From: Paragordius varius
Lineage: Eukaryota > Animalia > Nematomorpha
DNA: 64,000 nt
NCBI GenBank assembly: GCA_964247055.1
Contig: OZ176059.1
Coordinates: forward strand, 2,666,001-2,730,000
Reading direction: 5' to 3'
Shown here piece after piece: positions 1 through 43,400 of this stretch (its first letter is position 1; every line of letters begins with the position of its first letter). The translations under genes and the position numbers were made by a program. Below the pieces are notes generated by a model. It was not told the origin of the DNA and ran no database searches. It saw only the letters and a list, made by a program, of their open reading frames with translations.

Positions 1-2237
1 ACCTTGACAGTGCCAATAAGCAATGATGATATAAATGGAAATTTGACGGTCACCCCTAACTTGATGGAACAATTTAATGGGGCCGCAGATGTCGTTGTTA
101 ACGCCATAGCTAATATGGTGAAAGACGATTTGCACGAAACGCACAATATTGATTCAGGTTGTGAGTCTGATGATACCTCAAAATCTACTGTTGAAACTAT
201 TTGTAATGGCCCTCACACGATATTTGAAACACATAATTTACAGGTTTCATCACTCAAACCCAGTGATAATTTCTGCTTCCAGGGTGAAAAAATTATGGAA
301 ACTTTATCAGAATCAACAAACGTCCCTTCAACACTGTATACTACAACCGAGCTGTTACAGGGTACAGTGCCTCTCCTAGGTTTGATTGCAACTAGTCTTT
401 TAGTTTGTGGTAATAAAAACGAAAAAGTTTTATACACAGACCTTGAGAATAATTTCAAAATTTGTGTAGCAAATGCAGATGATATCCCAATCATTTGTGA
501 TAAACGTTACAGCTCGTTGGGCATTAAAAGTCATAGAGATTACCTGTTGGACATTTATAAACATTATCCCGACGGCTTTCTCCTCGTTAAAGATTTATCA
601 ACAAACGAAATCATAGGTAATATTTAATCTTAACGCCCTAATCATGTTTTTCAAAAAAATATAGTTTTAGCGATTTATCATGCATCTATTCTATGTCTAG
701 GTTCAATTTTAGCCATAAACTTTAAAAATATTGCTTGTGGTGGCATGTTTTTTATGGAGCCCGAGTACCGAAACCGCGGAATAGGAAGTAAGTTATGGGA
801 AGTTCGTAAATCATACATTCAAGATCGAATTCTAGTCGTAAATTCTGTGATGAATCGCCTAAATGCTAACCGTAAACTTGGAATGACAGATCATGAAAAA
901 GGTTATATATATCATAAAAATATTAAATAACATGTTTTTGAACCATTAACATTTATTGGGTGCAATATGGCTGTTAGTTTACCTTGAGGCATAGAGATTT
1001 TAGGCCAGGTGTTTCTAATACGCGGCCCCCCGAGAAAATAATTTGGATGTCCCTAATATTTACTTAAAAAATCTTATTAAATAAGAGATTTCTTGAAATA
1101 ATATCTGGAATCATTTATCCAAATGGCAACGATCTGGAAAAAACCTCTTATTATGTTTACAGTTTAATCGAAACTTAGCAAAATATATATGAATGCCTAT
1201 ATATAATATGAAACGAGGCTCGCCATTTAATAAAATAAAAATTCGGACCGCGAAGCCTTGTGTGTTGCTTACCCTCATCCCCTGTTTTAGGCACTTATTA
1301 CCTCAATATTTTTATATAATATTTAAATATACTCCTTTTAGTTTCCCTGTATCAGGCATATAATGTTACACCCCAGCAGTTATTACACGTATGTGATGAC
1401 CTTCTACCCACCTTGCATATCAATGAATGTGCCAACCCGTTACAAACTCCTTTACTCCCTAGTGTGGCTGAAAGAGAGGCAGTAAAGTTTTTTTCCATAA
1501 ATGATCAGTTCAATGCAGCCCCAACCATGGTGAATATAGAGGATAAAAAATCGTTTCTTACATCTATTCGGATTGAAGCGTCGACTGATTGGTCATGTCC
1601 ACCCAAGTTTTGGTCAAAATTGATGGAATTTGATACCTCAATTCATTGTGAGGATAGGGGTGATTTTCTTCGTACCCTATTAACGACTCATTCACACACT
1701 TATACAGTGGCCGTTTTTAAATTGTCATGCCCACTCACGCAGACAGATACAGATTATACGAATCTTTCCGAATGGGATGTAGTTGAATGCGTAGGGTATG
1801 GTGTTTTAAGGCCCAAATATATAGGCTACACCATAGCTCCCATGTATGCTACTCACAGTGATTACGCCTGCATCATTTTCAAAGATTTGTGCACAACCCT
1901 TGCCAATCTAGTCATTACCCAATGGGATAACGCAAACTTTGACCATCCCCTTGTGGTTTCTAAATCGAACAAAGTACCACCCAGTAAAGAGCTTGAGCTG
2001 ATAAAAGATGTCGAAACACCATCGGTCTTTTTTGACCTTACCTGTTTCAATGAAGTTGAGGAGGACGATGAGACAATGTTGAATACTAAACCTCGTAAAT
2101 CTTTTTTGCGACACGTTATTAAACAATTTGATGTTAACTTGGAAAAAAAATTTGTCCGTATGTTTTTAGGGGATTACGTGCCATTACCACGTGACAAAAT
2201 ATATTTCATCACGACAACTGAATCATTTATTACTTAA
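1..2237 (+). CDS. Tandem GNAT-family N-acetyltransferase (YitH/HolE-like C-terminal GNAT domain), 5'-partial; exons <1..616, 701..901, 1342..2237
   Basis: Frame is open from base 1. Phase-1 GT donors at 617 and 902 and AG acceptors ending at 700 and 1341 join the three ORF-track pieces in frame. Exon 2 carries the acetyl-CoA-binding motif A (GGMFFMEPEYRNRGIGSKLW). Exon 3 carries FDTSIHCEDRGDFL...GYGVLRP...IAPMYA, resembling the second GNAT domain of YitH-like proteins. Confidence 0.8.
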
Positions 2238-12331: not shown

Positions 12332-12397
12332 TTATAGCATTTTTTCAAAGGATGACATTATGTCGCTTTGTCGGTTAATATCAATGATTCCAGAGTT
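12332..12397 (-). other. Terminal exon encoding the P-TEFb-interacting C-terminal motif
   Basis: [21 protein letters not shown] follows [18 protein letters not shown] and resembles the BRD4-L C-terminus (IDMNFQSDLLSIFEENLF). Confidence 0.88.
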
Positions 12398-15300
12398 CTA
12401 TTATATATGTGTGGTAAAAAAATATTACTTTTTATTTTTATACATATGATGATGGCAATTATTATTAAATTTAAAACCCAAATATGAAACATAATAAATC
12501 CTATTTTATTCCAAACACCGGTTGAATTGCAAAAAAGGTAGCATACTTTGTTATTGTTTGTAAATATTTTATAGTTTAAACAATATTAAGGCTGGCTTAC
12601 CTACCAAAAAAACAATTGCCAGTTAATATTTAGGCTATAATTGAAGAGGATGGATTCGAAAATATATTAACCATAAATGAAAAAAACCTTAAAAATTGGT
12701 ATAAAATTCTTTGCAAATAAAAAACCATTGAGGACACCGTTTTTGTATACAAAATCCAAAACAAAACCTTACACGTAGTCTTTTTCAAAAAAAGGAATGT
12801 TGTGGGTAATGGGAATAATAATTAAATAAGCCTTAAAAAAATTGGCTAAAAAGCAAGAATTTTATATATTTCATAATATACAAAGTATATACGATTAATA
12901 TAGCAATATTTTTTTTGTATCCACTACTTTTTATTTCACAATTTCACTGAAAACTAAGGTTATTAATTCCTAATAGGGTTTTGAAACACTAATTTTTTTA
13001 ACCAATCCACTCAATATTAGTATATCTGTCAAAAATAGAGTTAGCATTGCAAAAATAAACCATTTCTCTTTTCCGTTTCTCCATCTCTTTGAGGCGTTGA
13101 CGTTCACGGGCCAAATCATCATGATGTTGGCTTTGAGCAGGTGATGGGGCGTGCTTAGTTACAGCAGTTATAGCGGTAACATTAGTCTGGTTAGATTTTA
13201 TTATCAGGTTTGTTGACGAAGAAGAAGAAAGTTTATTAAAAGACGACGACGACACTGTTGATAAATTTGTATTATTATTGATATTGGTATTTATATTACA
13301 AGTTGGTGGTATTGTCGCATTTACAATATTGCTAATATTATTATTATTATTATTGTTATTGTGGGATATTGTGGTACGTTTACTGATAGATGATGATGAT
13401 AAATTGACATTTGAAGCGAAACAAGTGGAAATGGTTGATGTGGGTGTTGTCCGGCTAACAATCAAGGTGGTTGTTAATGGTGAATACCTGTGATATAAAG
13501 ATATTGATATATACCATTTACAGTTCACATTAACCCTTGAACAATTTAAATTCACCCTTGAACAATTCAAATTCACCCTCGAACAATTTAAATTCACCCT
13601 AAAAATAAATTATGTGTTTTCGGGCAGCTAATATAACTCATTATTAATATGAAATATATCTTTATGGCCATAGTTTATTATTTTTTCGGTATTATTTTAA
13701 TTTTTATTTTCTAAAAATATATAAAAAATATTGGTAAATTTTAATCCTAAAAAACATATATTTTATTTGAGGGTGAATTTGAATTGTAAATGGTATTTAT
13801 ACAAACACTTGTTTAATTAGTCTTAAAAAAGGATATATATACCCTAGCTATAAACTATTTTTTATCATTTCAAGTTCACCCATAAACATCATTACAATTC
13901 ACCCCTGAATATTTCAAATTTCTAAAAATTAATTAGGTATTTTGGGTTAATATAATTATCAATGATATGTAATTCTTACTGGACATAGTTTATTTAACGA
14001 TTTCGAAAAAAATATTTTTTTAAAAAAAATTAAAATGTTTGAGGAATGAGTGATTTTAAGAAAGCAGCGCATGATATAAAATAAAATGCTTAAAATTAAA
14101 ATTAATATGTATATGTTTAACTTTTAAAATAACCTTTTTATTACCATACACTATATACATATACATATATATATATTAGAATATGTCTCAATCATAACAA
14201 TAAAATACTACCCAAATTTTAAATCACAAAAACAATTGGCAAAAAGTAGTTTAAAAAATTAAAAGTCACCGTATATGCATCTGTAAACCACCGAAAACAT
14301 TAATTTTATTATCTTAAATTTAACTTGGAAAACAAATGTATTTAAACAAAAATGTTTTTAAAAAAGATATATACCTTTTGTGAATATTTGAATCAATATG
14401 TGCTTTTTCTACCAGAGAGGTGGTCATGGTACTCTGATTATCAAATGTATTATGTTTAGGGGCTAAAACTTTGGATTTATAGGTTGAGTGTAAATTTTCA
14501 TTGGGGGAATTGAGATCACTAACATAAGGGGAAAAAACAATTATAAATTCTGTTTTTTTTAAAAAAATATATTCTTTTTTGTTATTCAATTTTAATGTTT
14601 TATAATTCTTTTTTTAATATATATTGTTAAAATTTTATAATTAATACAGTCACAAAAACAAAATTATATTGTAATAATCCTCCCCTATGTGTAAAAACGG
14701 TTATATAGAGCTATCAATCCTTTTTTATAGTAATTTTTAAGCCATTATGTTAATGTTTTATTATATAATGTACCGATGATATTCATTTTTGTGTTGCGCG
14801 GTCATTAAATTAGATGGTGTGCCAGTTAATTTTTCTGACGCTTTCGTACGTTCCTCTTGTTCTTTAAGTTGTTTTTGCTATAAATAAATAGATTTTAGTA
14901 ATGCAATTCAAATTTTAGCTGATTATAAAACAATAAATAATTGATATATTAGTTTAAAAATATATATATCTATATATTTATATATATATATATATATATA
15001 TTTACTACGAATCAAATAAGGAATCTGGCATTAACATCTTGATATATAGATTTGAATTTAAAATATATTTATTTATCCTAAGAAATTCATTCTTTTAAGC
15101 ACACAAAAATAAATATAATGTAAGTAACCATACCCTTTCTTCTTTTTCCAAAGCTTGTCGTCTATACAGCTCAAAACTATTATGAACTTCCTAAATATAA
15201 TAATAGTATGCGTTAAATTTATATATTATTGATTTTTAAAGCAAATCAAAAATGTTTACTTTTGGGCCCGTATGAGTTTCAACAGCCAACTTAGTTTTAG

Positions 15301-18300
15301 CAGATATTTGGGAATCATTATTAGCAGTAGTGATAGCAATATCAGGGTTTGTAATTTTTTTATCACATGTTCTGTAATAATTTAAAGTCGTTATATATTT
15401 TTGAGCCAACCTTATACTTATAATGTAATTATATATTTTAATCCCTTTAGTAAAAAAAGGCATATAAAATATATATGTGAAATATTTCAATTATCTGATA
15501 TTCATACATTGTCAGAGATGTGGCTGATAAATCATTATCAGTTTTCCCATTTTTCATGACATCCTCTTTATCATCTAAATAAAAGTTTTGGTAAAAAAAC
15601 AATATCCCTTTCAAAATTTTAAACAATATAAAAACAATGATTTTTGTAATTAGATTCAAATAATATATGACCAACTTTTAATATATTTATATTATATCGA
15701 TTAATTATACACTGTTTTATTAATTGAAAGTTAAGGTTAGAAAAATTCGTATAAAATGAAAACATTTTTTTGGGTATATGGGTTTTTAATCCGTTAAGAG
15801 AGAAAAAATTGTATGCATACAAATATGATTTTTTTGCTTTTAACCATATTGAAAGACCCATATAAATAACTATTAATATGACTGTTTACGACGAAATATT
15901 AAAACAGTCATGTAAAAACAACCACTGTTTTATAATGATTTATAATAAACTTAGCTTAACATAACTCAAAGTATGTGCATAAAACCACATGTTTCAATCA
16001 AATCATCATCATACATAAAATAGATCAAAAAAGAGAGAGTTACTTACCTAGTATTGTGCTACTATTACTACTACTGCTAGTATTTATGTTAATAGAGGTA
16101 TTGGAAACCAATGATAAACCATCGTCATCAGCTGTTTTTCCGCCATCACCACCACCATCACCATGTCCTTCTTCTCCAGTCACTATGGCCAACGCAGTAG
16201 GGGAAGGAGGGGGAGATTTACTATTTGCAGGACCGAGACCGGGGTCAGGACCAATGGTGGGTGGTCTCTTAGCAACAGCTGAGATCGGGCTGGTAGCCAA
16301 TGATGATGATGATGACGAGGAGGAGGAGGATGAAGATAAATTTGATTTATTAGTGCTTGATGAGGAGGAGGAAGTGGATGAACTATCATTACTGCTGTTT
16401 GATGAAAGGGATGATGAGGATAATCGTGTTCCGCCAACATCACCGCCGATATCATTAGTCTTTTTTTTCTCGTCTGTGAAAACAGCTGATGTTGTTTCGT
16501 TAGTTAAAATGACATGTGTTGTTGTGGTAGTGAAATTATTTTTTAAAGCTGTTGTTGTTGATGATGATGATGATGTTGATGTAAAAACTGAACAGGATGT
16601 AGAGGAGGAATGGGAAAGTGCCAATGTTATGTTATCACTATTAGCAAGGGCAGTTGTATGCGATAGATTAGACAAATCTTTCTTTCCATCAGAATTTATT
16701 ATGGTTGTATTAATAGAATTTATGGTTCTAGTAGCATTTGATAATGATGAGGATATGTATGATAATGATGTCGCCTGTTGTAAAGAAGAAACTGTAGGGG
16801 TGACTGGCAGAGTAGTACTTATAAGAGCATTATTGTTTAATAAATGATTTATATCATTGTTACTGTTGTTATTTTTATTATTGGGATGATGATGAGATTT
16901 GGTGGTGTATGTGGAGGAAGTAAGATTCATTCTAGTAGGACTTGAAGGAGTTGTGATTGCTGAAAAAACAAAATATGGTAATACAAAACTTCAAATTTAA
17001 TGAAATATTATTAATTGTATTGTATATAAAAACGCCTCATATCTATCTACTAAGATAAGTAACCATTACTAATTAATTTATTGTTGGTTACTTATTTCTT
17101 ATTATTTGCTAATTTTCAAAATAATCTGCACAATCTGACAAAAAAAACCTTAAATCAAATCTTCAAGAACAACTGAAAATGCTTAAAATAAGTTTTGTTT
17201 ATTTAGGTAAGACCTCAAATTCCTTTTCAAATTCTGAAAGCTAAAGTAAACTTATTAGAAAATACATTTTACTCTTCTCTAAGGTGCATTATGTATATAA
17301 ATAAATATCATTTACCATCAAGCATTGACAATGATGATGGCGGTGGTGTTGTCGTTTTAGACTCAACATTATTATTATTACTCTCTGTCACAGCTGTTGT
17401 TGTTGGTGCTGTTGATGAGGACATCAAAACAGCTGATCGAAAAGACGATGATGACAATGTCGTTGTGGCGGATGCAACATTTTTTGCCGACTGGATTACG
17501 GCGGGTCGTTCAGTGGACAACAGCTGTTGTTGTTGTTGCTGCTGTACTATAGGTGCTTGGTGATGAGGATGATACACATGAGTGGTGGGGAGTGAAGAAA
17601 CCCCACCAGGATTGCTCCCTCCCAAAGCGCCAGACACATCAAGGAGTCTGCGTTCAAGCTCCTGCCTCCGTTCCTTAACCAATTCATCTTTGCTTTTTTG
17701 GGCGGCTAATTTTTTGGCTATATATATACAGTAAAAATTTAATTTGTACAAAAGAAAAAAATGTAATAAACTAAAAGACAGATATCGGTTACGGTATAAA
17801 GACAATTACTTTTTCCTACATTATCTATCTAATCGCAATTGATTGATGTAATTAATTCAGTGTTTTATAAAACTACATATCTATTACTATTACATATTGC
17901 CTAAAAAAATTTAAGGATTGCTTTCTTAAAAAATATTTGTCTTTTAGTTATTACGTTTTGTTTGTATAAAGTGTACAAAAATTGTTTTACTTTAAATTTT
18001 ATATACATTATATAACATTTATATACAAATAAATTAAAGCATATGAGTTTAAAATTTATTTTATTGATTAAATGGTTACCAAAATAATAAACAAGCTAAT
18101 CTTCTACATTCTGGATGATAAGAGGGGAAGAGGAATATTCAATATATAAAAAAGATGGTTTACCGTAAAAATTAAGTTTTTTTATCATATTAAGCGAATC
18201 GTGTATAATTTGTAATCCAGAAACATTTTTTATAACATAACAAAATTAAATAAATATGTTTACAATATTGCTTCCTGGGTCGTTTACGGAGACAAGAAGC

Positions 18301-21300
18301 GACATAAGCCTCCAATTCCCGTAACGTGGAAGGTTTAAGCGTTTCAAAATCAATTTCAATCTCATCGGGATTGGAATCACGAAGTGATGGTTCTCTCGTT
18401 TGAATAATATGTACGACTTGACCAAGTTTATCACCTATAATACCATAAAAATATATGAATCAAATAAATAATAGTAATCGATGGAAAAATTAAGGGATTA
18501 AATATAAATTTGTTTTTTTTGGTGTACTCAAATTAAAAAACATAATATAACGTGTAAAAGTAACACTATGGATGTGGCTTATGAGACAATAAAATTAAAA
18601 TCTTTCATCATTAATAACCTAATAATTAATTATCATTTAAATGATAAACGGCTTATTCTATAAGCTTCTGCAAAAAACGCATGTTTCCTAATCTACAACG
18701 CTCTATAGAATTCGTATCCCCCCCCCCCAAAAAAAAACGTACAAATATTTCTCAATTTACTGTTGTTGTTAGTTAAAAGTCTTAAGGCGCGTTTCAATAA
18801 TTATAAATATTATTACCAGGCAACTTATTAATGTCCAAACTTAGTTGACGTTTTTCATCGTAGGACATAGGTTTGGTATTATCATCCTCCTCTTCGTTGC
18901 TATCATCAAACAGGTGGCCGGGCATAAAACTGGTCGAAGCAGTATTTGCCAATCTAGAGCTTTGATGGTGTTGCCCTAAACCTAAAAAAAGAAATTATTA
19001 AATTTATTAATGATTGTAATATTTTTTTTCTTTAAGAGTTTTTTTCTCCCAACAAGGGAGTAACCCTTCGGATAGATTCACGCCATAAGCATCGGTCCTG
19101 CGCATCTTCAATTTTGAGGTTTAAAATAGCCAGATGATTGCAATAACAAAACATTAAATGTTTAAATGTATTTATATGTATATTTATTTAATAACTTAGA
19201 TCGAATAATGGGAATATGTTACACTGTACACATCTATTGCGTTGTTTCGCAACCCAAAAGAATACGTTATGTTTAAATCTAGATTTCTTTAAAAATATAA
19301 ATATACTTTTCTGTCTTTAAATTTTATTATCTAAACAACGCAAATAGACTATTAAAATTTTGGTACATAGGATAAGCCAGGATAATGTAAAATTTTTATA
19401 CATTTATAGATGATTAAAACACACTAAAAAATACAATGTTTAGCGTAATGCATAAACATAAAAACCTATTCAATTATTAATTTTAAATGAATGGTTGGGA
19501 AAATCTATAATCTGCTCACATTTAATCTAACCTAACACCCTATTGCGTGTATATATGGAAATGATGTCGAAAAATTAAAAAATAAATAACGCAAAATAAT
19601 AGTTTTGTATGCAATAATAACCCATTTTTATTTACCGCAATTATGATAATAATAATAATAATAAAACTAACCTGATGTAGATATGGAGGAACGGTTTTGA
19701 CTACCTCGTGACAATTTATTACCAGCTGATTTGGGAGGATTTGGAGTTAAACTGTTGTTATTTATATTGAAATTAGTATGTTGAAAAAATTCGAAGAAAA
19801 AAATTGAATAAATAAAATATCAAAAAACATTCCGTATTTTATAAATTAAAGACCAAACAATATATAACAGCCTCTGTATGTGTTATATAAAAAAACTACG
19901 GTTAAGAAAAAACAACACCAAAGAGTTTTAAATAAATTTAGCGTTAAAAAGGTTTTGCCTAGAGAGTGTATAAGTAAAAAGTTTTAAAATAACTTATTAA
20001 ATATTATAATCAAAAATACTGACCTACTATCAACCATATGAGCGTCGGACAAACCGATACCAGTCGTCACATGATAGGACTGGTGTCCTTCAGCCAAGGA
20101 GGGCGCATTATTTCCCTCCTGTTGCGTTAACAGGAGATTATTAGTATTGTGTTGTTCATCGGTATGTAAAGTTGTATTATGGGTAGTGGTATTTATATCA
20201 ACATTAGACATGGTCGAATTAACTGAATGTGATAGGGTGAGTCCACCACCAGCACCGTTATAACTGCCAATAGTTTGGACCGGTCCAGCGGCGGTATTGC
20301 GTTTGGAAGAGGCGGCCTTTTTCCGCGTACTGCTGGGATTAGCGGTCGCTAATGTTTTATTTTTTCCCATCGTTATAACGCCAGAAGCATTATTATTTGT
20401 TGTGGCCGTTATTGTGGTATTGATAGTAGAGTGTCGTGATTTACGGTTCCCGCCGAGTAGGGTTGAAACTGTCCCCAAGGACGTGGAAGTTATCAAAGGA
20501 GGATTAATATTAACATTATGTTTAGCTCCTAAAAAAAGAGTATAAAATAATAGAAAAAGTGATACATATTTATTGAATTTGTTGGGATACAAAATACAAT
20601 ACACATTAAGTATACAGTATGCATATTAATGTTGATTCACATTGTTTTTGGGTAATCGTGAATACAGTAGCGTATGGGTAAAAAACAACAATGGATGAAA
20701 TCACAATTTTTTCCTCTCTTACAACCCTTAAGTCTATATTTAATTATGGAAAAAAATTATTTTATTTCATACGCTATTAAATGGCCAATTGGCTAACAAT
20801 AATGTTAATTCAACATAAAATTAATCTGTGTACTATATCTAATGCCACTTTCTAGTGGTGTTAGAGGGGAAGTATTAAATGTTCTGCAAAAAATGTCTTC
20901 TTCGCAATAAATTTTTTTTCAAAAAAGTGTGATAAGTAAAAAGTTAGCCTATCTGAAATTTTAAACCATGTATTGGAGTTATTTATACTAATAAGTTTAA
21001 TCCCTCCTCATTCTTTATACAAACAGCGCAGTGCAAATAAACAAATTTATTCATCCAATTCTAATTGGCTTTTTCGATCATTAAATTGGCCCGATTATTC
21101 GAGAAAAAATCGCTAAAGGTTAAGTGATAAACAATTTAGTTTGTAGTTTAAAAATCACCAATTAAAAAAAATAAAATAAAAAAATGGAAAAAGGGTAATG
21201 TTACGGATAAACTCCTTATCACTATAGGCTTGATTTAGTAAATGTTCTTTTATGGTAAATTTATAATTTTTATTTTTCATTTTCTGGTCCAACAAATTAT

Positions 21301-24300
21301 TATTTTTTTATAAACATATAAATGCGGTTACATTTTAATTGTATTGTAATTTGTAAGTATTACATCAAATGGCTATTACAAAACATAACTAATATGCAAA
21401 TATTTTGGAATGGTAGCAATTAAATATGGAAATAAAAAACTATAGTATACATTTTAATGCTGGCTTATTCCTATTATATTCAAATATTATTTAGTTGAGT
21501 TAGAAACTCTTTAAGGCCATAATAAGCCAGGCATTTTAGTAATAAACCGGCTCAAAAAATTAGTGGCAACACAGTAGTGTATGGTAAAAAAGTATAAAAT
21601 GTGAAATAAACAATATTTTCCCATCAAACATTATTTTGTTTATTTTATACAACATTTTATTGTTGTTTATTTCATATACTAGTGTGTTGCTAATTAACCA
21701 ACTATATAATGAGAATAAGCCAGCAATGCATAGTGTAAATGAATGATATATACCCCTCAGTAAAGTGTTTAATACTAATCAAACACATTAAAAAATCAAT
21801 TAAAGTCATGTATATGTAGAATTGATAGAAATCGTTTTTAAATGATTATAATTTGTTTTATCTTGTTTTAATGTTTGAATTGTCAACTTTTAACATGCGC
21901 ATTTTTAAGCATTAAAATAATAATAGCTTATTTATTGTAAACAATTAAAAACAAAGTAAAATCAATTAAAAACGTATATCTGACAATTCTAAACATACAT
22001 GACTGTATTTATATATATATATATAGTCATGTATTCTTTATTTTAACAAATTTTTTTTTTCGTTAAATGGGTTTAAATATTTGGTAAAGAATGGAAAAAA
22101 CAAGAGCTCTATAGTAAATTCTTAAACTTTTTTAATGATTATGATATTGTTAATACCATAGAGCTCATTTTTTACCAAATATTTTACCCATTTAACGAAA
22201 TAAAAAAATTTTGATAAAATAAAGGATCCCTGACTGTATATATATATATATATATATATTACCTTTGCTTCTCTTTTTCCCACTGATTGTTTGATAAGGA
22301 GTAGATGGTATGGAAGCTGTGTTAAGCATTTGTAACATTGGATCATCCATATCTATATATGTGTACAAGCACAATGATTATGTGATTTAATATGTAATCA
22401 GGAAATTATAAAGTGAAAAAAGACAGTAAGTCGATATATTTTTTATATTTAAAAATGACAAAAAAGGTAATTTAAATTACATATAAAATTATCTCAACCA
22501 AAAAAATATCATATAAATCAAACAAACTCTTTATGTGGGGAATTAATGACCGCATAAGTCATAATTATAGATTTGGCAAAAATTTAAAAATAAATTATAA
22601 ATCTATTAATGGTAATAATATATACCATTTACAATTCAAATTCATCCTTTAACAATGCAAATTTACTCTCGAAAATTCAAATTTTCTCTTGAACAATGCA
22701 AATTCTTCCCAAAAAATATTATGTTTTTGGGCTAATATAACTCATCATTAATATGATATATATAGTTTATTATTTTAGCATTATATTAATTTGGAACAGA
22801 ATTTCATATTTTAAAAATATTGAAAAATGAAGGTAAGTTTTTATAAAAAACATATATTTTATTTTAGGGTGAATTTAAATTGTTTAAGGGTATTTGGTAA
22901 ATAGTATATTGTCACAAAAAAAAGTCATAATGATATATTTTGCCAAAAAAAGCAAAAATGTCAACTCCCAAATGTAAACTAATACGTGTTTGACAATATG
23001 GGCCGGCCTCTCAAAGAAAAAATGAACGTGTCCAATATAAATTATAAAATACCAAAGCCGGCAAATATTATATCATATTTTATTATATTATGGTAAAATC
23101 ACCGCCATAAATGATGTTATTGGCCTTATTATTTGTCCCCAACAGAAAATATATAACAATTAAGATAATAATGAAACTAAAAGATCCATTATTCATTTGT
23201 GTCATATTTAAGGGGTACCTATTTATGTTTTGGAAAACTACGCATTTGTGTTAAAGTTGATGATAAACTTTAATAGAATATAGGGATAATACCATATACG
23301 AGAAATAAATGCAATCAATATAAGATTAGCTGACTATCGATATATTTGCACATTAACTTTTTTAACTCGAACTAAACTTTTGTATCATACATTTTTTATG
23401 AAAAATTCATATAATTTTTGATAAATTATAATTGCAATATAATAATACAATAAATTCATATAATTTTTGAAAAATTATAATTGCAATATAAAAATACTTA
23501 ATATATTAATATACCACACCTTCTCTTCCTAACATGGCATTTGTGCTACTCGTTATATCAGTCGCTAACATGCCACCTGAATCATCACCCGTTTTTGTTG
23601 TGGATGAACGTTTCAATTTTTTCTTTCGCCTTTTACTGCTTGTTGTGTTATTGGAGCTAGTTGTGTTAATATCATTAATATTGCTTAGTAGAGTTGGGTT
23701 TGTCGTAGCTTTGGCCGTAAGTGTTGCCAATTGTTCATGGATACTACGTAACTAATATATGTATATATATAAAAATGGACAATTTTTGTTAATCCATATG
23801 GGAGCACAATTAAAAAATAAATAAATGCATAACGCATAATTTGTGATATCAAAATATTGATGATACAGACTTCAAACTGTCAACTTTATATATAATCCAT
23901 TTCGGGAAAGGACAAACTCATAGCATTAACGGTTTATACAAATAATTAGGTAGTTAAAAATTAAGCACAAAGTGCCATTTTAGGTTAGAAATCAATAGGT
24001 ATTAAGGGTAACTGGTTTCCTAGTGCATATATATATTATTTTATATGTCCTATTTAAGATTGAAAAAACCATGTAAATCACAAATTTTAGTGTTCAGATA
24101 AAACCAATCAGAAAAAAAGAATAACCTGAGCCTGCAGTAGGGCTAGGTGTCGTTGTTTCTCCACCGTGTTCAAGGCAGAGACAGCTGCAACAGCGGAAGG
24201 GACCGAACCCGAAGAGTGCGCTGCCAACGAATCATCTCCCGAGGTATAACCATCGCCTGTGCCACTACTGCTACTGCCGCTATCACTATTACTATCACTG

Positions 24301-27300
24301 TTTTCATCGCTATCCTCATCATTTTCACCGGTCCCATCAACAACAGCTGATTTAGCGCCCATATGATCTAGCGCACCGCCACCTCCGGCGGCCCGTCCAC
24401 CCCTTAATCTAGCGGCGGCGGTGGCACCACCCGTGGCCACAAGAGTTGAGGAAGCGGATGAACTGCGTGACCTTCGGCCACCTGCTAATAGGGGAACAGC
24501 TGTTTGCTGCATAAAAGAGTGATGGAGATGTTGAAGCTGTTGGTGTGGCAGTAGCTGTATTGGTTCATCCGGCATTTTGGCAAAACGCATTTCAAACACA
24601 TCCTACATGTTAAAATAGCAAATATATAGAGATAATATGTTAAACAACCTGATATAAAATGAAATGTGTTTAATATCGAATTTTTAAACCTATTAACTGA
24701 ATGCCAATAATTATATACAGATATTTTTTTGTGTATAATTTTAAAACAAGCGAGTCCTATAGCCACCTCTCCGCGATGTAGGACAGATCACGCTAATGGC
24801 AACAGTTTATAATGTTTTGTAAAATATTAGTTGTACATAAGAGCAGGTGTTGCGTAAAAATTGCCTTAGATAACCATGAAGCATAAATCTAAATATATAT
24901 TACTTCGCAGTTAAAAATTTCAATCCTGAACTTTACCTACCTACACAATTAAATAAGAATGCTACTCATCTTAATATGAAACGTTTTAAAAAGAAAAATA
25001 TGGCTATTACTACTTTGGGTATCAATGTGTTATAAATAGAAAATTGTCGACATAATATTACAGTAAGATTATTAAATATTTATCAAAAAAAACAAATGAT
25101 TATCCAAATGAAAAAAATGATTAGCACAGGGTTAACAAAATATGTTAAATGTGAAAGTAGATACAACAGAAAGAATTTATCAAGTATCGTATATTGTGTA
25201 GTATATATTACATATTTTTTATACATGTGCTAATCATTTTTATCTTTTGAATATTCATTTTTTCCGTGATAATCATTTATAATTAATTTTACAGTAATTA
25301 GCATTTATAGAAAGAATAATTTTTTTAACCTGTAAACGCCGGGCCATAGCAACTACATCATGATCAGGGGGATTGTACTTGTAACAATTGGTAAAGATTA
25401 ACCGTACATCCAAAGAAAATTCTGTGGGATTTCTATATTCACGGGCTTCTAATTTTTTCTGTAAAATAATAGTAATAAAAACATTAAAAGGGTTGGGTTT
25501 TAATTGGACTGACGGCCTTATAAATGCAATCAGTCATGGTCAAACTAGTCATCATTAACACAAATGTAAAATATGTGTTAAACAAAATAATATAGTACCC
25601 ATTTTTCAATACTATTTACACTTTAAATCCACCCTTGAACAATTCAAATTTACCTACGAACAATTCAAATTAACTCTAAAATAAATTATGTATTTTTTAA
25701 GATTGAAAATTACTTATATTTTTTTACATTTTTAAAAAACGAATGTTTAAAATTAAAATAATACTGAAAAAATTATATATACCAAGCCATTAAAATATAT
25801 AGCTCAAAAATTCATAATTTAGTTTTAGGGTAAATTTGAATTGTTTGAGGGTGAATTTAAATAAAGTTTGAATTGTTAATGATATATTAATGAGTAATTA
25901 TATATTAAATTTAACAATTTTTAATATCAAATCTTGGTTTATATTAAGTTAAATCATCAAAAAAATAATATTAAACATTTTTGACTGGTAAATTATAAAG
26001 TTAGCCGGGTCCAACCCTGAACATAATTTGGACGTGTTATAATAACGCAATTACAATTAACAAAGTTTTAAGAAGATAAAAAAGGTAAAAGTTATACATA
26101 TATATATATATATATATATAATGTAAAATTTAGATCCCAAATATACCTTAACAGTTCCCAAGTCCATGGGTTTTTTGATAATATCATAATAGTCGGGGAG
26201 ATTGAGTTCAAGAACATCGACAGGATTGTAAAATGGCCATGCATATGACTTCACAAAAAAAGACATAATAATATTATAACTAAAATTAAATAAATTTTAA
26301 CCTTAATAATGAAATGATAAATATACAAGTTTCTTACTATATGTAATGATAACATTAAACGACGTTTATCATAAACCGTATTATACCATTTACAATTCAA
26401 TTTCACCCTTAAATTCAAATTCACCCTTAAACAATTCAAATTCACCCTCGATCAATTCGAATTCACCCTCAATTAAAATATATTTTTTTTAAGTTTAAAA
26501 ACTACCAATATTTTTATATATTTCTAAAAAATAAAATTATTTATTTTAGATTTAAATCAAACAAAATAATAAACTATAACATAAACATATATTTCATATT
26601 AATGAGTTATATTAGTTCGAAAATACATAATTTATTTTTAGGGTGAATTTGAATTGTTCAAAGGTGAATATGAATAGTTGAAGGGTGAATTTGAATTGTT
26701 CGAGGGTGTGAATTGTTCAAGGGTGAATATAAACTGTAAATGGTATATTTACAACATATCTATTTAAAAAAATATTATATATAGCTAATTCTTTTAATAT
26801 AATTTTGTAAAAAAATAAAAAAGTTTACATGATGCTTTTTGGAAAACATTTCTTTGATTAGGTCAGCACAATATTTCATTTGAACGGGCAAGCCACCCTT
26901 TTTCAGATGCTACAATGATAAAATAACGCATTATCATATAAATGGACGAATATAGAGGAAATATAATAATTTTAAGAGTTGTGTAATGACAAAAAAACGC
27001 CTGAATCAAATAATTACATAATGTGAAAATATAGTCAATCCTATTTCGCAAAAAATTATGTCTTATGTGATATTGTTTATGAAAAATAAATAATCAGATA
27101 TATTTTAACTATAAAACGCCTATATGTCTGAAATTCGTTGTTTCTCCTCGAGTATTATAGCAATGCTTAGTAATTAAAACCATAATTCCGAGTCACGTAA
27201 ACTTATAAAAAAATATACTTTATTTAGCTTGAGTGTGTAAAATGATTTGTTAGTAATGGTAATAGTAAAAAATTGATTACCCCTTAATATTAACGTTTAC

Positions 27301-29859
27301 ATTGAGCATAAACACTAAATTACTTTACTCAGATATTGAAAAAAAAGGTAGGTATAAAACAAAGTAAAAAATGGTAAACTTGTTGCGTTTCAGGCAAATC
27401 TTTGGATGGTTTTCGTATGGCCCGGGACGAAGTTTCTCGCCTACCACTCGCGTCCACGGCTCCAGTCAAAAAATTTGAACCCGCCATCGTCCCATAATAA
27501 TCATAATGATGGTAATCAGATGGATATACGTTATCCGCCCCCACCACGGGTACAAACGTATTGGGTGTTGTGGTGTCGGCTTGCCGTTTAACACCACGTT
27601 TCTAATATTGTAGCGTAATATAATAAATAGCATTTGGTGTACATTTTTTGGGGGAGGGTTTACAAAAAGATGTAATGGTAACGAGCGTATGCAAAAGGGT
27701 AAATCAATTGTTTTTTACCATGGTTAAAATTAGATTAGGCAAAATAAATTAATAATAAAAAAAATTGCAAAAATAAAGTAAAAATGAGTAAATCTATCAA
27801 CATAAGCGCTAAGTTACAATAAACGAAAACTTACTTTAGCGTTCAAGTTACATTTTATTTTTTTGCAAGACAAATCAACTATGTTTCTTTAGTGCCGCTT
27901 TAAAAAGGCAATAAAGGTTTATAATAGTTAAAATTTTATATTTATTAATAAATATAAAATTAAAATGAAATGAAGACATAGAAATATTATCGCAAAATTA
28001 CAGGTTTTTTATATTTTTTAACAATGTTAAGAGCAGAAAAAAGTTGGTAATAGCTACATTTTAATATCATAAAGATTTCAAATTCATTCAAAATTATGTC
28101 AGAAACCTAATATTGACATTTTTCATTTAGACATGAAAAATGAATTAACAATTTGGACAAAGCTTTGAAAACTTCTATAAGTAAACAAAAAACTATCAAT
28201 AAAATTATTTAAAATATTTTCGCTAATCGCCAAAAAATTTAATGCCAAATTGTAAATTAAAATTTTTTAATGCTTTTATGAAGTCTAAAATTTAAAATTG
28301 ATCAATAATAAAATAATTACCACAAATCAGATAATGCACCAAAAGAGGCAAGCTACTTGCATGTTAATTTTAATACACAATTTGACTATTATTTAAATAA
28401 TAAAAAAAACTCAAAAGGCGAAAAGCCCGTATCACTCAACAGGCGTTTTATATAACTACTCAGAAAGCGATTGCTTATATAATTTTAAAAAATGTCGCAA
28501 AATGTAATTTTTTAAAAACCGGGATGTAATGAAATAAAATATACCGTATAATGTAGAAATATTTTTAGGGATAAAACACATTTTTAAAATTAGTTGTATA
28601 TATTTAAAACCTAATGAAAACGGGTTTTGGCGCACACAAATGTTACAAAATATATATATATTATACCTGTTGTTTTTTCATGTTAAGTTTAGAATTTAGA
28701 TTAGAATGTGGAATAGTGTTGGATAAATGTTCAGATTTTACCATAGATGACGGGAATAGAGTATTCTCATTCGATGATAAAGGCAAATTCGAATTAGTAC
28801 TATCAACAACCATTTCACTTGCGTTTAAGTTTTTTTGATGAATTTGGTGCCTAGAATCGGGAAAACCAGGTGTATCAGCAGAATCAAAACCAAGATTAGT
28901 ATTAATTTGTTGTTGGGAAGTGGTCGATGTTGAGTCATCATTACTATCGTCTGCGCCATGGGAAATCGTCTGCCCGATCAAATCGGTAGCAACTAAGTTA
29001 TTACTTCCTGGAATAATGGAATGATTAAGATTTGATGAAGATGGTATGTATGATGGATCCTTATCTAGTTTATTAATATATGCAAGGTATATAAAATATT
29101 TATGTATTATATTTAGAATAAAAGGCACTCTTAAAAAATAAAAAAACTAACTTTTTGGAACAGTTTTGACTTTTTTTGCTTTATTCTTGGATTTGCTCGA
29201 TGAAAGAATTTCAACTTCATCAGTCGGCATCGCTGCAAGTTTGGCTTGATAAGTTTTTTCGACTGCTTGAGCCATGAGGACAACATCCTCACCCGGTTTG
29301 TTATAGATATAACAATTTGTAAAAACGGTATTAATGTCATTCAAACATTCCTGTGAAGTATAATAATAATGATTTTCCAAACGTTTTTTGATTGTACCAA
29401 AATCCATGGGATTTTTTATAATTTTATGATAATCCTATAAGATATATACAAAAAATTATACAGGTAAATTTAATGCAACAGCGTCGACTGGTTTTTGAAA
29501 AGGCCAAGAAAAATGATGTTTCCAAATAGCAGGAATAACTTGCTTAAGAATATAATTTAATTGGTTGGTAGATCTTCCTTTATTGGGAATATCTGGTTTA
29601 ACAGGAGGTTGGACTACTCCAGGCCGTATCATATAGGGCTATAAATATAATTTAAACCATACATTTTTGACCGAAACAATATCCTCATCAATTTTTAGCA
29701 CATCCATGTCCTCATTATCTCTATATAACACAAATTAAAGTTTTAACCCGAAAATAAGAAAAATCAATTTTATATCAAATTATTCACTTACGCATTAGTT
29801 TCAACATCTTTTGACGTTTGCTCAAAATTCTCTATATTATGATTCACCGTGTTTTCCAT
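12332..29859 (-). CDS. BRD4: BET family bromodomain protein, long isoform (BRD4/fs(1)h-L-like), 25 exons, 5529 nt, ~1842 aa
   Basis: Exons in transcript order: 29792-29859, 29663-29720, 29462-29638, 29152-29434, 28667-29064, 27380-27601, 26829-26909, 26147-26248, 25330-25458, 24126-24602, 23520-23751, 22263-22352, 20024-20528, 19672-19751, 18817-18981, 18264-18434, 17316-17717, 16048-16959, 15508-15574, 15260-15371, 15134-15190, 14774-14877, 14375-14518, 13061-13487, 12332-12397. All are GT-AG with consistent phase. Contains BD1, motif A ([13 protein letters not shown]), BD2, ET and the C-terminal motif. Exons 1-2 and the small low-complexity exons are less certain than the domain exons. Confidence 0.93.
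13514..13793. mobile_element. MITE family A (TA|CCATTTACA...TGTAAATGG|TA; 21-bp TTGAACAATTCAAATTCACCC repeats)
   Basis: Terminal inverted repeats with flanking TA and about 4 tandem 21-mers at the left end; lies in BET intron 23. Confidence 0.85.
18264..18981 (-). other. Extra-terminal (ET) domain of the BET gene (exons 15-16)
   Basis: [20 protein letters not shown]|[54 protein letters not shown]. Confidence 0.97.
22024..22236. mobile_element. ~215-bp Tc1-like MITE (CAGTCA termini) inserted in (TA)n
   Basis: Arms of ~100 bp in inverted orientation (TAGTCATGTATTCTTTATTTT / AAAATAAAGGATCCCTGACTG|TA). Homologous to the element split at 42985-45687. Confidence 0.8.
22625..22904. mobile_element. 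MITE family A copy
   Basis: TA|CCATTTACAATTCAAATTCATCC start, 21-bp repeats, the shared internal segment CTAATATAACTCAT, and a degenerate right TIR. Confidence 0.75.
25090..25290. mobile_element. Small inverted-repeat element (MITE-like), also present at ~61640-61840
   Basis: AAATGAAAAAAATGATTAGCAC pairs with GTGCTAATCATTTTTATC. The string TTTTCCGTGATAATCATTTA is shared with the 61.8 kb copy. Boundaries are approximate. Confidence 0.45.
25612..25880. mobile_element. MITE family A copy (degenerate)
   Basis: CCCTTGAACAATTCAAATTTACC repeats on the left and inverted GGGTAAATTTGAATTGTTTGAGGGTGAATTT on the right. Confidence 0.65.
26386..26743. mobile_element. MITE family A copy (both 21-bp arrays preserved)
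   Basis: TA|CCATTTACAATTCAA at 26384 and AACTGTAAATGG|TA ending at 26745, with inverted 21-bp arrays at both ends. Confidence 0.88.
29152..29638 (-). other. Bromodomain 1 of the BET gene (exons 3-4)
   Basis: [39 protein letters not shown]|[21 protein letters not shown]...[17 protein letters not shown], with the WPF shelf and the conserved acetyl-lysine-binding Asn. Confidence 0.97.
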
Positions 29860-40413: not shown

Positions 40414-43400
40414 ATGATGTATCAACTAATGCTAAATACTTTATTACCCGTTTTCTATATAATATATTGTGGTATTACAGGTAAAACCTTTTTTATTATT
40501 GCGATATATAGAGAAGGATAGATATAGTTTCTTTTTATGATATTACTAAACAATTTCAATTATATATGCATACTTAATAATTTTATCTATGGATATTGAC
40601 TCAACTCACAGCTAGATTATTGTTGGGAAAAACTATTTTTTATAAAGTTAAAAGGTCCCTTAATTACTAAAACAATTAAAACTGTCTGTACAATTTTTTA
40701 GAACAATCCTATATAATATTCGATTGTAACAACTTATATCAAAAAAAATGTTTCATTTGCTTGGTATAATTAGATGTGTATTCTGAATGTGGGCTCCAAT
40801 ATGCCAGAATTAGTACGCCAAATTGCAGTTTATTATCACAAAACATTATCAATGGATATCCTGCCAATATCCAGGCTTGGCCTTGGCAGGTACTTTTGAA
40901 AAATATAATATTTTTTAGCTTTTCCTCAAAATGGAACGCAGATATGATTGTGGAGCTGTGCTCATTCATCCAAAATTCGCTTTAACCGCTGCACACTGTG
41001 TGTGGGGAAAGTTTGTGCACTTAATTAATATTTTACTTATTATAATATATATTCTATAATATCTCTTTAGATATTACATATTATTTATAATCATGTATCA
41101 TTAGCTCGAATATTTTATATGAATGAATATATCAAAATCATTTAAACTTCGGTGTTGTCTTTCTTAAATCGTTTGTATGACTGCCTGATTTACCAATCTT
41201 AATAAACGCTATCTATTAAAAACTATGGGCAAAATTGGATTACCTCTTTAAAAGAAAATATTTATTTGGGTTGGGATTTTAAATAGTTTAAAACCGGTCT
41301 GACCATGCTTGTGAATGCAATCATTCACGTAACCAACCAATTAAAACTTTGCTAAATAAAAACATAAATTGACACTAATCAAAATGATTAATTAGTATTT
41401 TTACTATGAAAACTGTAATCATACATGGGAAAACGTTTTGATTGATTGGGAAAATGTTTCGATTGACTGAAAAACGAGAAATCCAAAATTTTTGATCACA
41501 GTGTTTAAATGCTTTTTAAGATTCGGTAAAGGAAAATATTGGATAAAAATCCTGAGGCAAAGGATATTTCGTCCAACTTTATGTATACCATAGAATTATT
41601 TCATTTTAATTCATTTTAGGCATGTGAAAATGATACAAGTTTATGGGCGCGTTACCAACCTATTTAATGCCGTGTACATGGATGATCCCAATGCTTGGAG
41701 ATCTTTAGTGAGCAACGTTCATTACAGCAAAGATTTTATGTAATATTCTATACTATTTTATTTATATAAAATATTTATAATCTGTCTTTAATTGTAAAAT
41801 ATTTTTTTTTCGTTCAAAGTTATAACTTAAAACAACTAATAATAAGATGTACTAACGGTTCATAAAATATTATAAACTGCTTAAGTTTGCCCATTCATCA
41901 AATAATAAACAGGCTTTCTAAAAAAGGGATTTAGTAAAGTAACATAAAGATTGCATAGAAGGGAATTGGTTAAAAATTGACTTTAAACAAAGTTTCTTAT
42001 AGCTTTAGTTTAGTTTTCCCTAAATTTATGAAGGATATTATTTACTAAAAAATCCATGAAAGTTAAAAAATATCAAAACGACACATATCTTAAAAATTGA
42101 ATTTATACTGGCAAAAGGTAAAAATATAAAGACAATTTTTTTTTCAAAAGACCGTTGTACTTTTTAAACTTGATTTTAATAATAGCAATGTATGTATTAG
42201 ATATGTAAATTTGTAATACAATCATCTATATATTTTTTAAATTTTAAATTAATATAAGTGAAAAATCAAGGTTTGAAAAAAGTATGGTTGTTTTTTAAAA
42301 AAAAATATTGGTCATTTTAACGTTATGTCTGTATAATTTCAATTTTTACCCTAATTGGGAGAAAATAAATTAGTTTTAGTAAATGATATGCCACGCGTCT
42401 TGCACACGCCTGGCTAAGAGTTACCATAAATTCATTAAGGATATTTTATAATTATACTTAAAAACCCATGAAAGTTTAAGAAAAAAACAAATTTTTACCA
42501 TATATATTTTGTGTGTGTGGTAACTAAAACAGGCCAGCCCATCCCCCGGTCGGTGATATAGCTATTCTTGAATTGACTGAGACGGCTCCGTTAGATAGTT
42601 TTGTCAATTTGGTCTGTCTACCCGATAAGGACAGTACTCCAAATGCCGCCACGGGCCAGGATTGTTATGCTACGGGATGGGGTTTAACCCGATTTGAACC
42701 AAGTTTACTATGAATTAATTGATTGATAGCTTTTTACTAACTATAAATTGTGCGCAAAAATTGGATAATTTACACAAAATATATCAGTTTTAACAAAAAT
42801 ACTTTAGAAAACTTATTTATTTCAAGTTTTTTTAGACATTTACAGTATGAGTAAATATATATTGCTATAGTTTTTCATTAAATATTTCTAGATAGCATAT
42901 CGCAGTAAAAAATAAAAAATATAAATATAAACCAATTATATTGATATGCTATCAGGCAACAAAAAATGGAAAATTAGCTATGTACAGTCATGTATCCTTT
43001 ATTTTATCCAAAATTTATTTTCTTTCGTTAAATGGGTTTAAAGAGTTGTTAAAGAATGAAAAACAAGGGTTCTATGATATTAATTATATATACCATTTCC
43101 CAGTCTAAATAAACGTTTTCCCAGTCAATCGAAACATTTTCCCAGTCAATCGAAACGTTTTCCCAGTCAATCGAAACATTTTCCCAGTCAATCGAAACGT
43201 TTTCCCAGTCAACAAAAACGTTTTCCCAGTCAATCGAAACGTTTTCCCAATCAATAAAAACATTTTCCCAGTCAATCGAAACATTTTCCCAGTCAATAAA
43301 AACGTTTTCCCAGTCAATAAAAACGGTTTTATTTTTGATGATAAATATCAAAACAAGACATAAAATTAACTTTTAACCATTATCAGCGTAATATTAGGAT

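What the first reader, a model, noticed from the sequence alone, without database searches (positions are those of the whole stretch)
29435..29461. Obligatory 27-nt spliceosomal intron inside bromodomain 1
Seen: GTATAATTTTTTGTATATATCTTATAG (27 nt, minus strand) separates ...AVALNLP from [11 protein letters not shown], two halves of a highly conserved motif that join in phase 0. If retained it reads GTA TAA, an immediate stop, so an intact BD1 requires splicing. Knowledge: typical animal minimal introns are longer (modes about 45-50 nt in C. elegans and about 60 nt in Drosophila); 20-33 nt introns are characteristic of Paramecium. 3n-length tiny introns tend to carry in-frame stops, making them visible to NMD, as here. 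Inference: this animal splices near-ciliate-sized introns while the same gene has introns over 1.5 kb, which would imply an unusual spliceosome or intron-definition mode.
Basis: partly seen in the sequence, partly recalled or inferred. Interest (0 to 1): 0.78.

Follow-up and report, generated by a model that had tools for sequence, protein, structure and literature searches.

The report
27-base intron in hairworm BET gene
A 27-base stretch that splits the first bromodomain of a BRD4-like gene in a horsehair-worm-type genome is very probably a real, miniaturised version of an ancient animal intron, a size so far published for only two other animal groups, but its removal from RNA could not be checked here.

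Summary
On the minus strand, 29461-29435 is a unique 27-nt GT...AG segment. It sits exactly between ...[10 protein letters not shown] and [11 protein letters not shown], which correspond to human BRD4 residues 95 and 96. It is in phase 0 and has two in-frame stops.

It is very probably a genuine spliceosomal intron:
- The closest relative is a BRD4-like gene of the hairworm Gordionus sp. m RMFG-2023. It has a 47-nt intron at the identical codon boundary, after an exon of identical length (177 nt).
- A sea spider (11,954 nt), a sea cucumber (3,000 nt) and two unnamed animals (78 and 85 nt) have introns at the same site.
- Both flanking exons are under strong purifying selection (dN/dS 0.05-0.07).
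- The donor GTATAA is also used by a 1,065-nt intron of the same gene.

The same gene has a 24-nt intron, orthologous to a 44-nt Gordionus intron. A protease gene in the window has a 29-nt intron.

The "unusual spliceosome" inference is untested.

Published animal introns under 30 nt are limited to myxobolid Myxozoa and Dicyema. I found no paper on them in Nematomorpha. This scan has already noted the same tiny-intron class more than 100 times elsewhere in this genome.

The parts
29435..29461 (-). The 27-nt intron (intron 3), GTATAA...TTATAG, phase 0, between LNLP and DYHK of bromodomain 1
   Evidence: It is orthologous to the 47-nt intron L006:2438-2484 of Gordionus.
29462..29638 (-). Exon 3 (177 nt): [12 protein letters not shown]...[10 protein letters not shown], the first half of BD1
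   Evidence: It is 81% identical to Gordionus P0272 residues 37-95. The Gordionus exon L006:2261-2437 has the same length. dN/dS is 0.052.
29152..29434 (-). Exon 4 (283 nt): [11 protein letters not shown]...TVPK, the second half of BD1
   Evidence: Pfam Bromodomain positions 28-83 of 84. Aligns to BRD4 from residue 96. 74% identical to Gordionus residues 96-187. dN/dS is 0.070.
29639..29662 (-). Intron 2, 24 nt, GTATGG...TTATAG, phase 0, directly before PYMIRPG
   Evidence: It is at the same position and phase as the 44-nt Gordionus intron L006:2217-2260.
29663..29720 (-). Exon 2 (58 nt)
   Evidence: Read. Its frame is consistent with exons 1 and 3.
29721..29791 (-). Intron 1, 71 nt, GTAAGT...TATAG, phase 2
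   Evidence: Gordionus has a 108-nt phase-2 intron within two codons of this place.
29792..29859 (-). Exon 1 with the ATG ([22 protein letters not shown]...)
   Evidence: The motif EQxSKxV is shared with the Gordionus N-terminus.
29065..29151 (-). Intron 4, 87 nt, GTTAGT...CTAG, phase 1. This is the least certain boundary of the set.
   Evidence: Gordionus has a 46-nt phase-1 intron at the corresponding place.
28667..29064 (-). Exon 5, Ser/Asn-rich linker
27602..28666 (-). Intron 5, 1,065 nt, with the same donor hexamer GTATAA as the 27-nt intron
12338..29859 (-). The whole BET (BRD4/fs(1)h-like) gene: BD1, BD2 (exons at 26248-26147 and 25458-25330), the ET region (18435-18253) and the C-terminal motif (13117-12338). 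Further introns measure 470, 580, 688, 727 and 374 nt, and one is about 3 kb.
   Evidence: tblastn of Gordionus P0272 against the window. Boundaries. Pfam result.
40890..40918 (+). An independent 29-nt GT-AG intron (GTACTT...TTTTAG) in a trypsin-like protease gene, between ...AWPWQ and LFLKMERRYDCGAVLIHPKFALTAAHC
   Evidence: The downstream exon matches Pfam Trypsin positions 18-44. The length is not a multiple of 3, so the frame is kept only if the segment is removed.

Best explanation
The 27 bases are a genuine U2-type GT-AG spliceosomal intron: intron 3 of an intact, selected BET-family gene (BRD4/fs(1)h-like) of a nematomorph (horsehair worm) other than Gordionus montsenyensis. It is a shrunken form of an ancient phase-0 bilaterian intron, which measures 47 nt in Gordionus and up to about 12 kb in other animals. 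I infer that the ordinary spliceosome removes it by intron definition, using the same weak AT-rich signals (GTA... at the 5' end, TAG at the 3' end) as the long introns of the gene. The branch adenosine is probably one of the As 8-12 nt upstream of the AG, followed only by a very short T-rich run. If the intron is retained, TAA at the second codon ends the protein inside BD1, and the transcript would be a target for nonsense-mediated decay.

Shown here: the sequence, the exact junction, the orthologous intron position and phase, purifying selection on both exons, the donor shared with a long intron, and two further introns of 24 and 29 nt in the window.

Inferred: actual removal in RNA, the branch point, intron definition and NMD.
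For: The junction matches BRD4 residues 95/96 exactly. GT and AG ends, two in-frame stops, and a sequence unique in the window. The closest relative is Gordionus sp. m RMFG-2023 XP_065312793/4. Its locus L006 has exons and introns of 62|108|46|44|177|47|280|46 nt, against 68|71|58|24|177|27|283|87 nt here. The LNLP|DYHK site, its phase and the preceding exon length are identical. The same phase-0 site carries an intron in Nymphon striatum (11,954 nt), Holothuria leucospilota (3,000 nt) and two unnamed animals (78 and 85 nt). NG86 dN/dS is 0.052 for exon 3 and 0.070 for exon 4, with synonymous sites near saturation (pS about 0.7), so both halves of BD1 have stayed functional. The donor GTATAA is identical to that of the 1,065-nt intron 5. 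BD2 of the same gene reads LNLPDYY without interruption. Introns under 30 nt are documented in other animals with long-read transcript support (PMC13644364).
Against: No transcript-derived or annotated protein of this species turned up in three word searches and one exhaustive search. An assembly error that shortened a longer intron cannot be formally excluded without reads. The branch point and any short pyrimidine tract are only guessed, from three introns.
Confidence: 0.85

Rival explanations
1. Assembly artefact: the real intron is longer (for example about 45-50 nt, as in Gordionus), and roughly 20 nt of AT-rich sequence were lost in assembly or polishing.
For: The segment is low-complexity AT-rich DNA. 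No reads could be inspected. The first 23 or so bases resemble the start of the Gordionus intron, but only marginally (93 of 2000 shuffles score as well).
Against: The GT and AG ends and both exon boundaries are intact to the base. Exon 3 has exactly the Gordionus length. No direct repeats flank the site that could have driven a collapse. Two other introns of 24 and 29 nt lie in the same window. Earlier notes of this scan list the same size class at many other places in the genome (these are leads, not tested here).
Confidence: 0.07
2. The 27 nt are not removed. The locus would then produce a protein truncated inside BD1, or be a decaying copy, and an intact BET protein would come from a paralog or from other splice sites.
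For: Gordionus has two BET paralogs, so a second copy in this genome is conceivable. No RNA evidence was obtained.
Against: dN/dS is 0.05-0.07 on both sides of the segment, and all downstream exons checked are open over 17 kb. The insert sits exactly at the ancestral intron site with GT-AG ends. No alternative GT/AG pair preserves the conserved PVDA...[15 protein letters not shown] core.
Confidence: 0.04
3. The segment is removed by something other than the spliceosome: somatic DNA elimination of a ciliate-IES-like short segment, or another RNA processing route.
For: The size and AT-richness resemble Paramecium IESs. The segment ends in TATAG.
Against: Excision at TA boundaries would leave CCTG-TA-TAGGAT, which has an in-frame TAG, and would not restore LNLP|DY. 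Only the GT...AG boundaries do. The site is a spliceosomal intron in five other animals. The local RNA fold is unremarkable (z = -0.9).
Confidence: 0.02

Closest known systems
Ultra-short (<30 bp) spliceosomal introns of myxobolid Myxozoa (Henneguya salminicola median 27 bp; Thelohanellus kitauei and Myxobolus rasmusseni median 22 bp), Hadjez et al. 2026, PMC13644364
   Same: Animal GT-AG introns of 20-30 nt at conserved positions between conserved exons. The 5' signal is reduced to GTa, with a few A residues a short distance upstream of the AG and little or no pyrimidine tract. The validation logic is also the same: positional conservation.
   Different: Those genomes are compact (tens of Mb) and most of their introns are tiny. 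Here the tiny introns sit at the 5' end of a 17.5-kb gene whose other introns are 374-1,065 nt and about 3 kb, in an AT-rich stretch that carries a transposase-like ORF with short tandem repeats. The lineage is an ecdysozoan. RNA support exists there (Iso-Seq) but is lacking here.
Dicyema japonicum short introns (mean intron 38 bp, genome 67.5 Mb), Lu et al. 2019, PMC6736024
   Same: A parasitic bilaterian with introns under 30 nt and a reduced GTa 5' signal.
   Different: It is a spiralian with genome-wide short introns. The contrast between 5'-tiny and 3'-long introns within one gene has not been reported there.
The orthologous 47-nt intron of the Gordionus sp. m RMFG-2023 BRD4A-like gene (XP_065312793, locus L006:2438-2484)
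   Same: Same gene, same codon boundary, same phase, same preceding exon length, and a GTATA... start. In both species the first four introns are the short ones, followed by long introns.
   Different: It is 20 nt longer and ends in ACAG. The three short Gordionus introns measure 44-47 nt, which is within the usual animal range. Here the corresponding ones measure 24, 27 and 87 nt.
Tiny introns of ciliates (Paramecium 20-33 nt; Stentor 15-16 nt)
   Same: The size class, the AT-richness, and the GTA...TAG ends. Retention is exposed by in-frame stops. (The Paramecium part is from my own knowledge; Stentor is cited in PMC13644364.)
   Different: In ciliates essentially all introns are tiny, and the spliceosome has co-evolved with them. 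Here tiny and kilobase introns coexist in one transcript. These are unrelated lineages.

Membership tests
U2-type GT-AG spliceosomal intron | GT at the 5' end and AG at the 3' end | tested here: met
   GTATAA...TTATAG. No other AG lies inside the segment.
U2-type GT-AG spliceosomal intron | Removal restores an uninterrupted, homologous reading frame at an exact junction | tested here: met
   The exons align to BRD4 residues ...95 and 96.... tblastn with the Gordionus protein shows a clean 9-codon insert containing two stops.
U2-type GT-AG spliceosomal intron | Intron position and phase shared with orthologs | tested here: met
   Gordionus 47 nt, Nymphon 11,954 nt, Holothuria 3,000 nt, and two unnamed animals with 78 and 85 nt. 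All are phase 0 between the same residues.
U2-type GT-AG spliceosomal intron | Branch-point adenosine and pyrimidine tract upstream of the AG | tested here: inconclusive
   Candidate As lie at intron positions 15, 17 and 19 (8-12 nt before the AG), followed by CTT. There is no consensus branch site, and three introns are too few for a logo.
U2-type GT-AG spliceosomal intron | Absence of the segment from mature RNA | not testable with these tools
No transcript-derived protein of this species was found.
Animal ultra-short intron class (<30 nt; Myxobolidae and Dicyema type) | Length below 30 nt at a conserved intron position | tested here: met
   27 nt here; 24 nt (29639-29662) and 29 nt (40890-40918) in the same window.
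Animal ultra-short intron class (<30 nt; Myxobolidae and Dicyema type) | 5' splice signal reduced to GTa | tested here: met
   The three tiny introns start GTATAA, GTATGG and GTACTT. The long introns of the gene have equally weak donors: GTATAA, GTTTAC, GTAAAC, GTATAT, GTTAAA and GTTATT.
BET family (BRD2/3/4, fs(1)h) | Two bromodomains followed by an ET domain and a C-terminal motif | tested here: met
   Pfam Bromodomain matches on BD1 and BD2 exons. tblastn with Gordionus P0272 (which carries PF00439, PF17035 and PF17105) matches the ET region at 88% and the C-terminal motif at 90-95%.
Ciliate-type IES (DNA elimination) | TA-bounded segment whose excision restores the reading frame | tested here: not met
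   Excision between the TA dinucleotides leaves an in-frame TAG. Only the GT...AG boundaries restore LNLP|DY.

The most novel reading that the evidence does not exclude
One nematomorph lineage has lowered its minimal intron length by about 20 nt relative to Gordionus (24-29 nt against 44-47 nt at orthologous sites). This would create a discrete class of introns under 30 nt at the 5' ends of genes, in a genome that also keeps kilobase introns. It would be a third, independent origin of sub-30-nt introns in animals and the first outside compact genomes. It would also offer a sister-species contrast for finding which spliceosome component (for example SF1, U2AF or SF3b spacing) sets the lower limit.
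Probability: 0.5. Interest if true: 0.75.

Novelty: new member of a known kind. Interest (0 to 1): 0.6.

Why it matters
Introns under 30 nt were long thought absent from animals. They were reported in 2026 as confined to two parasitic lineages with compact genomes (PMC13644364). A hairworm-type ecdysozoan appears to splice 24-29-nt introns in the same transcripts as kilobase introns, while its relative Gordionus has 44-47 nt at the same sites. That would show the lower size limit is not tied to genome compaction. It would also give a tractable comparison for what sets the minimal distance between the 5' splice site, the branch point and the 3' splice site. In practice, default aligner and gene-finder settings (minimum intron 20-40 nt or more) would break such genes, which bears on the low BUSCO scores and the 'gene loss' reported for hairworm genomes.

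Tried and rejected

2. Looking for a transcript-derived or annotated protein of the same species that spans the junction. I ran a word search with exon 4, the exhaustive representative search with exon 4, and word searches with the Gordionus BD1 region at two length ranges. None found a protein of this species. The best hit was Gordionus, at 74-81% identity.

Exons were searched one by one, by reference.

4. The second Gordionus paralog. Its gene range exceeds 100 kb, so no DNA was returned, and its shorter products are not on record. The Priapulus locus is not on record either.

5. A blind scan of the window for GT...AG segments of 18-40 nt between open frames gave 462 candidates. Most are frame-jumps inside long ORFs, so the scan is not usable as a census. 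One candidate at 1349-1376 was inspected and rejected, because the frame is open without splicing.

6. Sequence homology between the 27-nt intron and the 47-nt Gordionus intron is marginal (93 of 2000 shuffles). There is none for the 24-nt against the 44-nt intron.

7. A hairpin between the 5' part of the intron and exon 4 is no more stable than shuffled sequence (z = -0.9).

8. An Rfam scan of the window for snRNA or other RNA genes gave no match.

9. Papers. No paper in the searchable library mentions short introns in Nematomorpha. The Cunha et al. 2023 hairworm genome paper is not held in the library and could not be checked.
Full report
**The observation.**
- On the minus strand, 29461-29435 reads GTATAATTTTTTGTATATATCTTATAG.
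- The open frame upstream (29638-29462) ends ...[15 protein letters not shown]. The frame downstream (from 29434) starts [25 protein letters not shown]....
- Against solved structures, the upstream piece aligns to human BRD4 up to residue 95 (LNLP), and the downstream piece aligns from residue 96 (DYYK). The junction is therefore exact.
- The downstream piece covers Pfam Bromodomain positions 28-83 of 84.
- Read through, the 27 nt give V*FFVYIL*, with two in-frame stops.
- The 27-mer is unique in the window at up to 3 mismatches. It has no flanking direct repeats.
- No other GT/AG combination nearby keeps the conserved core.
- BD2 of the same gene reads ...[17 protein letters not shown] without interruption.

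**The gene.**
All exons were handled one by one, by reference.
- Reading the minus strand gives this structure:

| Element | Coordinates | Length | Notes |
|---|---|---|---|
| Exon 1 | 29859-29792 | 68 nt | contains the ATG |
| Intron 1 | 29791-29721 | 71 nt | |
| Exon 2 | 29720-29663 | 58 nt | |
| Intron 2 | 29662-29639 | 24 nt | |
| Exon 3 | 29638-29462 | 177 nt | first half of BD1 |
| Intron 3 | 29461-29435 | 27 nt | the finding |
| Exon 4 | 29434-29152 | 283 nt | second half of BD1 |
| Intron 4 | 29151-29065 | 87 nt | least certain boundary |
| Exon 5 | 29064-28667 | 398 nt | |

- The following introns measure 1,065, 470, 580, 688, 727 and 374 nt. There is also a gap of about 3 kb between consecutive homology-supported exons.
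- The gene runs to about 12338 and carries BD2, the ET region and the C-terminal BET motif.
- The donor of the 1,065-nt intron 5 is GTATAA, the same hexamer as in the 27-nt intron. All donors of the gene are weak and AT-rich (GTA or GTT followed by A/T), and most acceptors are TAG, CAG or AAG. The tiny intron therefore carries no special signal.

**The organism.**
- A word search with exon 4 found only BET fragments of 55-74% identity.
- Re-scoring the hits of the exhaustive search exon by exon singled out one protein: P0124/P0272. It is 81% identical over the whole of exon 3, including its poorly conserved start, and 74% identical over exon 4.
- Its sources name it 'bromodomain-containing protein 4A-like' of Gordionus sp. 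m RMFG-2023, XP_065312793/4.
- The next best matches reach no more than 66% on exon 3.
- The window has 23-37% G+C. The Gordionus montsenyensis genome paper gives 26.93% G+C and 63.8% repeats (10.1101/2023.06.26.546503).
- Synonymous sites between the two genes are near saturation (pS about 0.7).
- The window therefore comes from a nematomorph-like animal that is clearly a different species from that Gordionus. This agrees with earlier notes of the scan, but I reached it independently.

**Orthology of the intron.**
- The Gordionus locus (L006, GCA_954871325.2) was aligned to its own annotated protein under GT-AG rules. The result is: exon 62 nt, intron 108, exon 46, intron 44, exon 177, intron 47, exon 280, intron 46, exon 470, then a 19.6-kb intron.
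- The 47-nt intron lies between LNLP and DYHK in phase 0, after an exon of exactly the same length as in the window.
- The 44-nt intron lies directly before PYM(L/I)(K/R)PG, as the 24-nt intron does here.
- Phases 2, 0, 0, 1 are the same in both species.
- The same site is also split in more distant animals:

| Animal | Locus | Intron at the site |
|---|---|---|
| Unnamed animal (Logan contigs) | L001/L002 | 78 nt, GTGAGT...CAG |
| Unnamed animal | L003-L005 | 85 nt, GTACGT...CAG |
| Nymphon striatum (sea spider) | L007 | 11,954 nt, LNLV\|DYHK |
| Holothuria leucospilota (sea cucumber) | L008 | 3,000 nt, LALP\|DYYQ |

- Several database fragments start with (L/M)QDY..., which is a read-through of a CAG acceptor at this very place.
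- The 27 nt therefore occupy an ancient bilaterian intron position.

**Is the gene alive?**
- NG86 estimates between the window and Gordionus give dN/dS of 0.052 for exon 3 and 0.070 for the first 82 codons of exon 4. Differences are concentrated at third codon positions.
- Both halves of BD1 have been kept by selection. This requires that they are joined in the product.

**Other tiny introns in the window.**
- The 24-nt intron of the same gene is described above.
- On the plus strand, 40890-40918 (29 nt, GTACTT...TTTTAG) separates ...IINGYPANIQAWPWQ from LFLKMERRYDCGAVLIHPKFALTAAHC in a trypsin-like protease gene. The downstream exon matches Pfam Trypsin positions 18-44, and the length is not a multiple of three.
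- All three tiny introns start GTA and end (T/A)TAG, with A-rich sequence 8-14 nt before the AG.

**How it most likely works.**
- This is conventional GT-AG splicing of a miniaturised intron, with recognition across the intron.
- A branch A lies some 8-12 nt from the AG, and there is almost no pyrimidine tract.
- Retention is exposed by TAA at the second codon.
- These steps are inferred.
- For the published animal cases (myxobolid Myxozoa, median 22-27 bp, and Dicyema), the authors describe the same reduced GTa signal and weakly conserved As upstream of the AG. For the myxozoans they also report a conserved branch-point-interacting region of U2 snRNA and U2AF1/U2AF2 orthologs (PMC13644364; Dicyema mean intron 38 bp, PMC6736024). 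An 'unusual spliceosome' is therefore not required by the data, though it is not excluded.

**What could not be done.**
- No protein of this species, annotated or transcript-derived, was found in any length range searched.
- Without reads, an assembly collapse of a longer intron cannot be formally excluded. It is unlikely, given base-exact exon boundaries, an exon of identical length in Gordionus, the absence of flanking repeats, and two further introns of the same size class in the window.

**Novelty.**
- In the searchable library, introns under 30 nt in animals are reported only for Myxobolidae and Dicyema (PMC13644364).
- The two hairworm genome papers held do not contain the word 'intron'. 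No paper links horsehair worms with short introns.
- The Cunha et al. 2023 paper is not in the library.
- This scan has already noted the same class many times on other DNA of this genome: 106 notes hold the words searched. One follow-up says RNA of the species shows such introns being removed from a neighbouring gene. Those notes are leads that I did not test.
- What this locus adds is a clean case: one of the most conserved motifs of any chromatin reader, an exact ortholog 20 nt longer in a named hairworm, the same site in a chelicerate and an echinoderm, and the same donor hexamer on a 1-kb intron of the same transcript.

**Verdict.**
- It is very probably a real 27-nt intron (0.85): a new lineage for a known kind of feature.
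- The mechanistic speculation about an altered spliceosome is untested.

Noticed in passing
window 29639-29662 (minus strand): A 24-nt GT-AG intron (GTATGG...TTATAG, phase 0) lies directly before PYMIRPG in the same gene. It is at the same place as a 44-nt intron of Gordionus (L006:2217-2260).
   Followed up: yes
window 40890-40918 (plus strand): A 29-nt GT-AG intron in a trypsin-like serine protease gene, between ...AWPWQ and LFLKMERRYDCG...TAAHC. The frame is kept only if it is removed. Its ortholog in Gordionus was not looked up.
   Followed up: partly
window 29859-28667 compared with L006:2001-3280: In both hairworm genes the first four introns are the short ones: 71/24/27/87 nt here and 108/44/47/46 nt in Gordionus. 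Much longer introns follow: 1,065 nt here and 19.6 kb in Gordionus. The short introns therefore cluster at the 5' end in both species, and only their minimum differs.
   Followed up: partly
L008:21832-21978 and L008:22034-22180 (Holothuria leucospilota): There are two tandem copies of the exon that encodes the second quarter of BD1 (DYYQIIK...SPGE and DYLDVIK...NPGE). Both are included in the annotated protein P0281. They look like mutually exclusive duplicated exons that have been mis-annotated as consecutive.
   Followed up: no
Gordionus sp. m RMFG-2023, proteins P0272 and P0279/P0397 (same 93.7-Mb chromosome): Gordionus has two BET paralogs that are 83% identical in BD1 and equally similar to the window gene. 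One is named 'serine-rich adhesin for platelets-like' by its source, and its gene range exceeds 100 kb. Whether the window species also has two copies is unknown.
   Followed up: partly
window 29417-29428 and 29449-29460: The 5' part of the 27-nt intron is 92% complementary over 12 nt to codons 3-6 of exon 4. The predicted hairpin (-7.6 kcal/mol) is no better than shuffled sequence (z = -0.9).
   Followed up: yes
window 1377-2237 (plus strand): A long open exon matches Pfam Acetyltransf_18 (GNAT domain, E = 2.9e-07). A candidate 28-nt intron at 1349-1376 from my blind scan is a false positive, because the frame is open without it.
   Followed up: partly
window 43670-44620 (minus strand) and 45289-45672: A 316-aa open frame is followed by an array of short tandem repeats, which translates as repeated 'IDWENVS'. 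I did not examine it.
   Followed up: no
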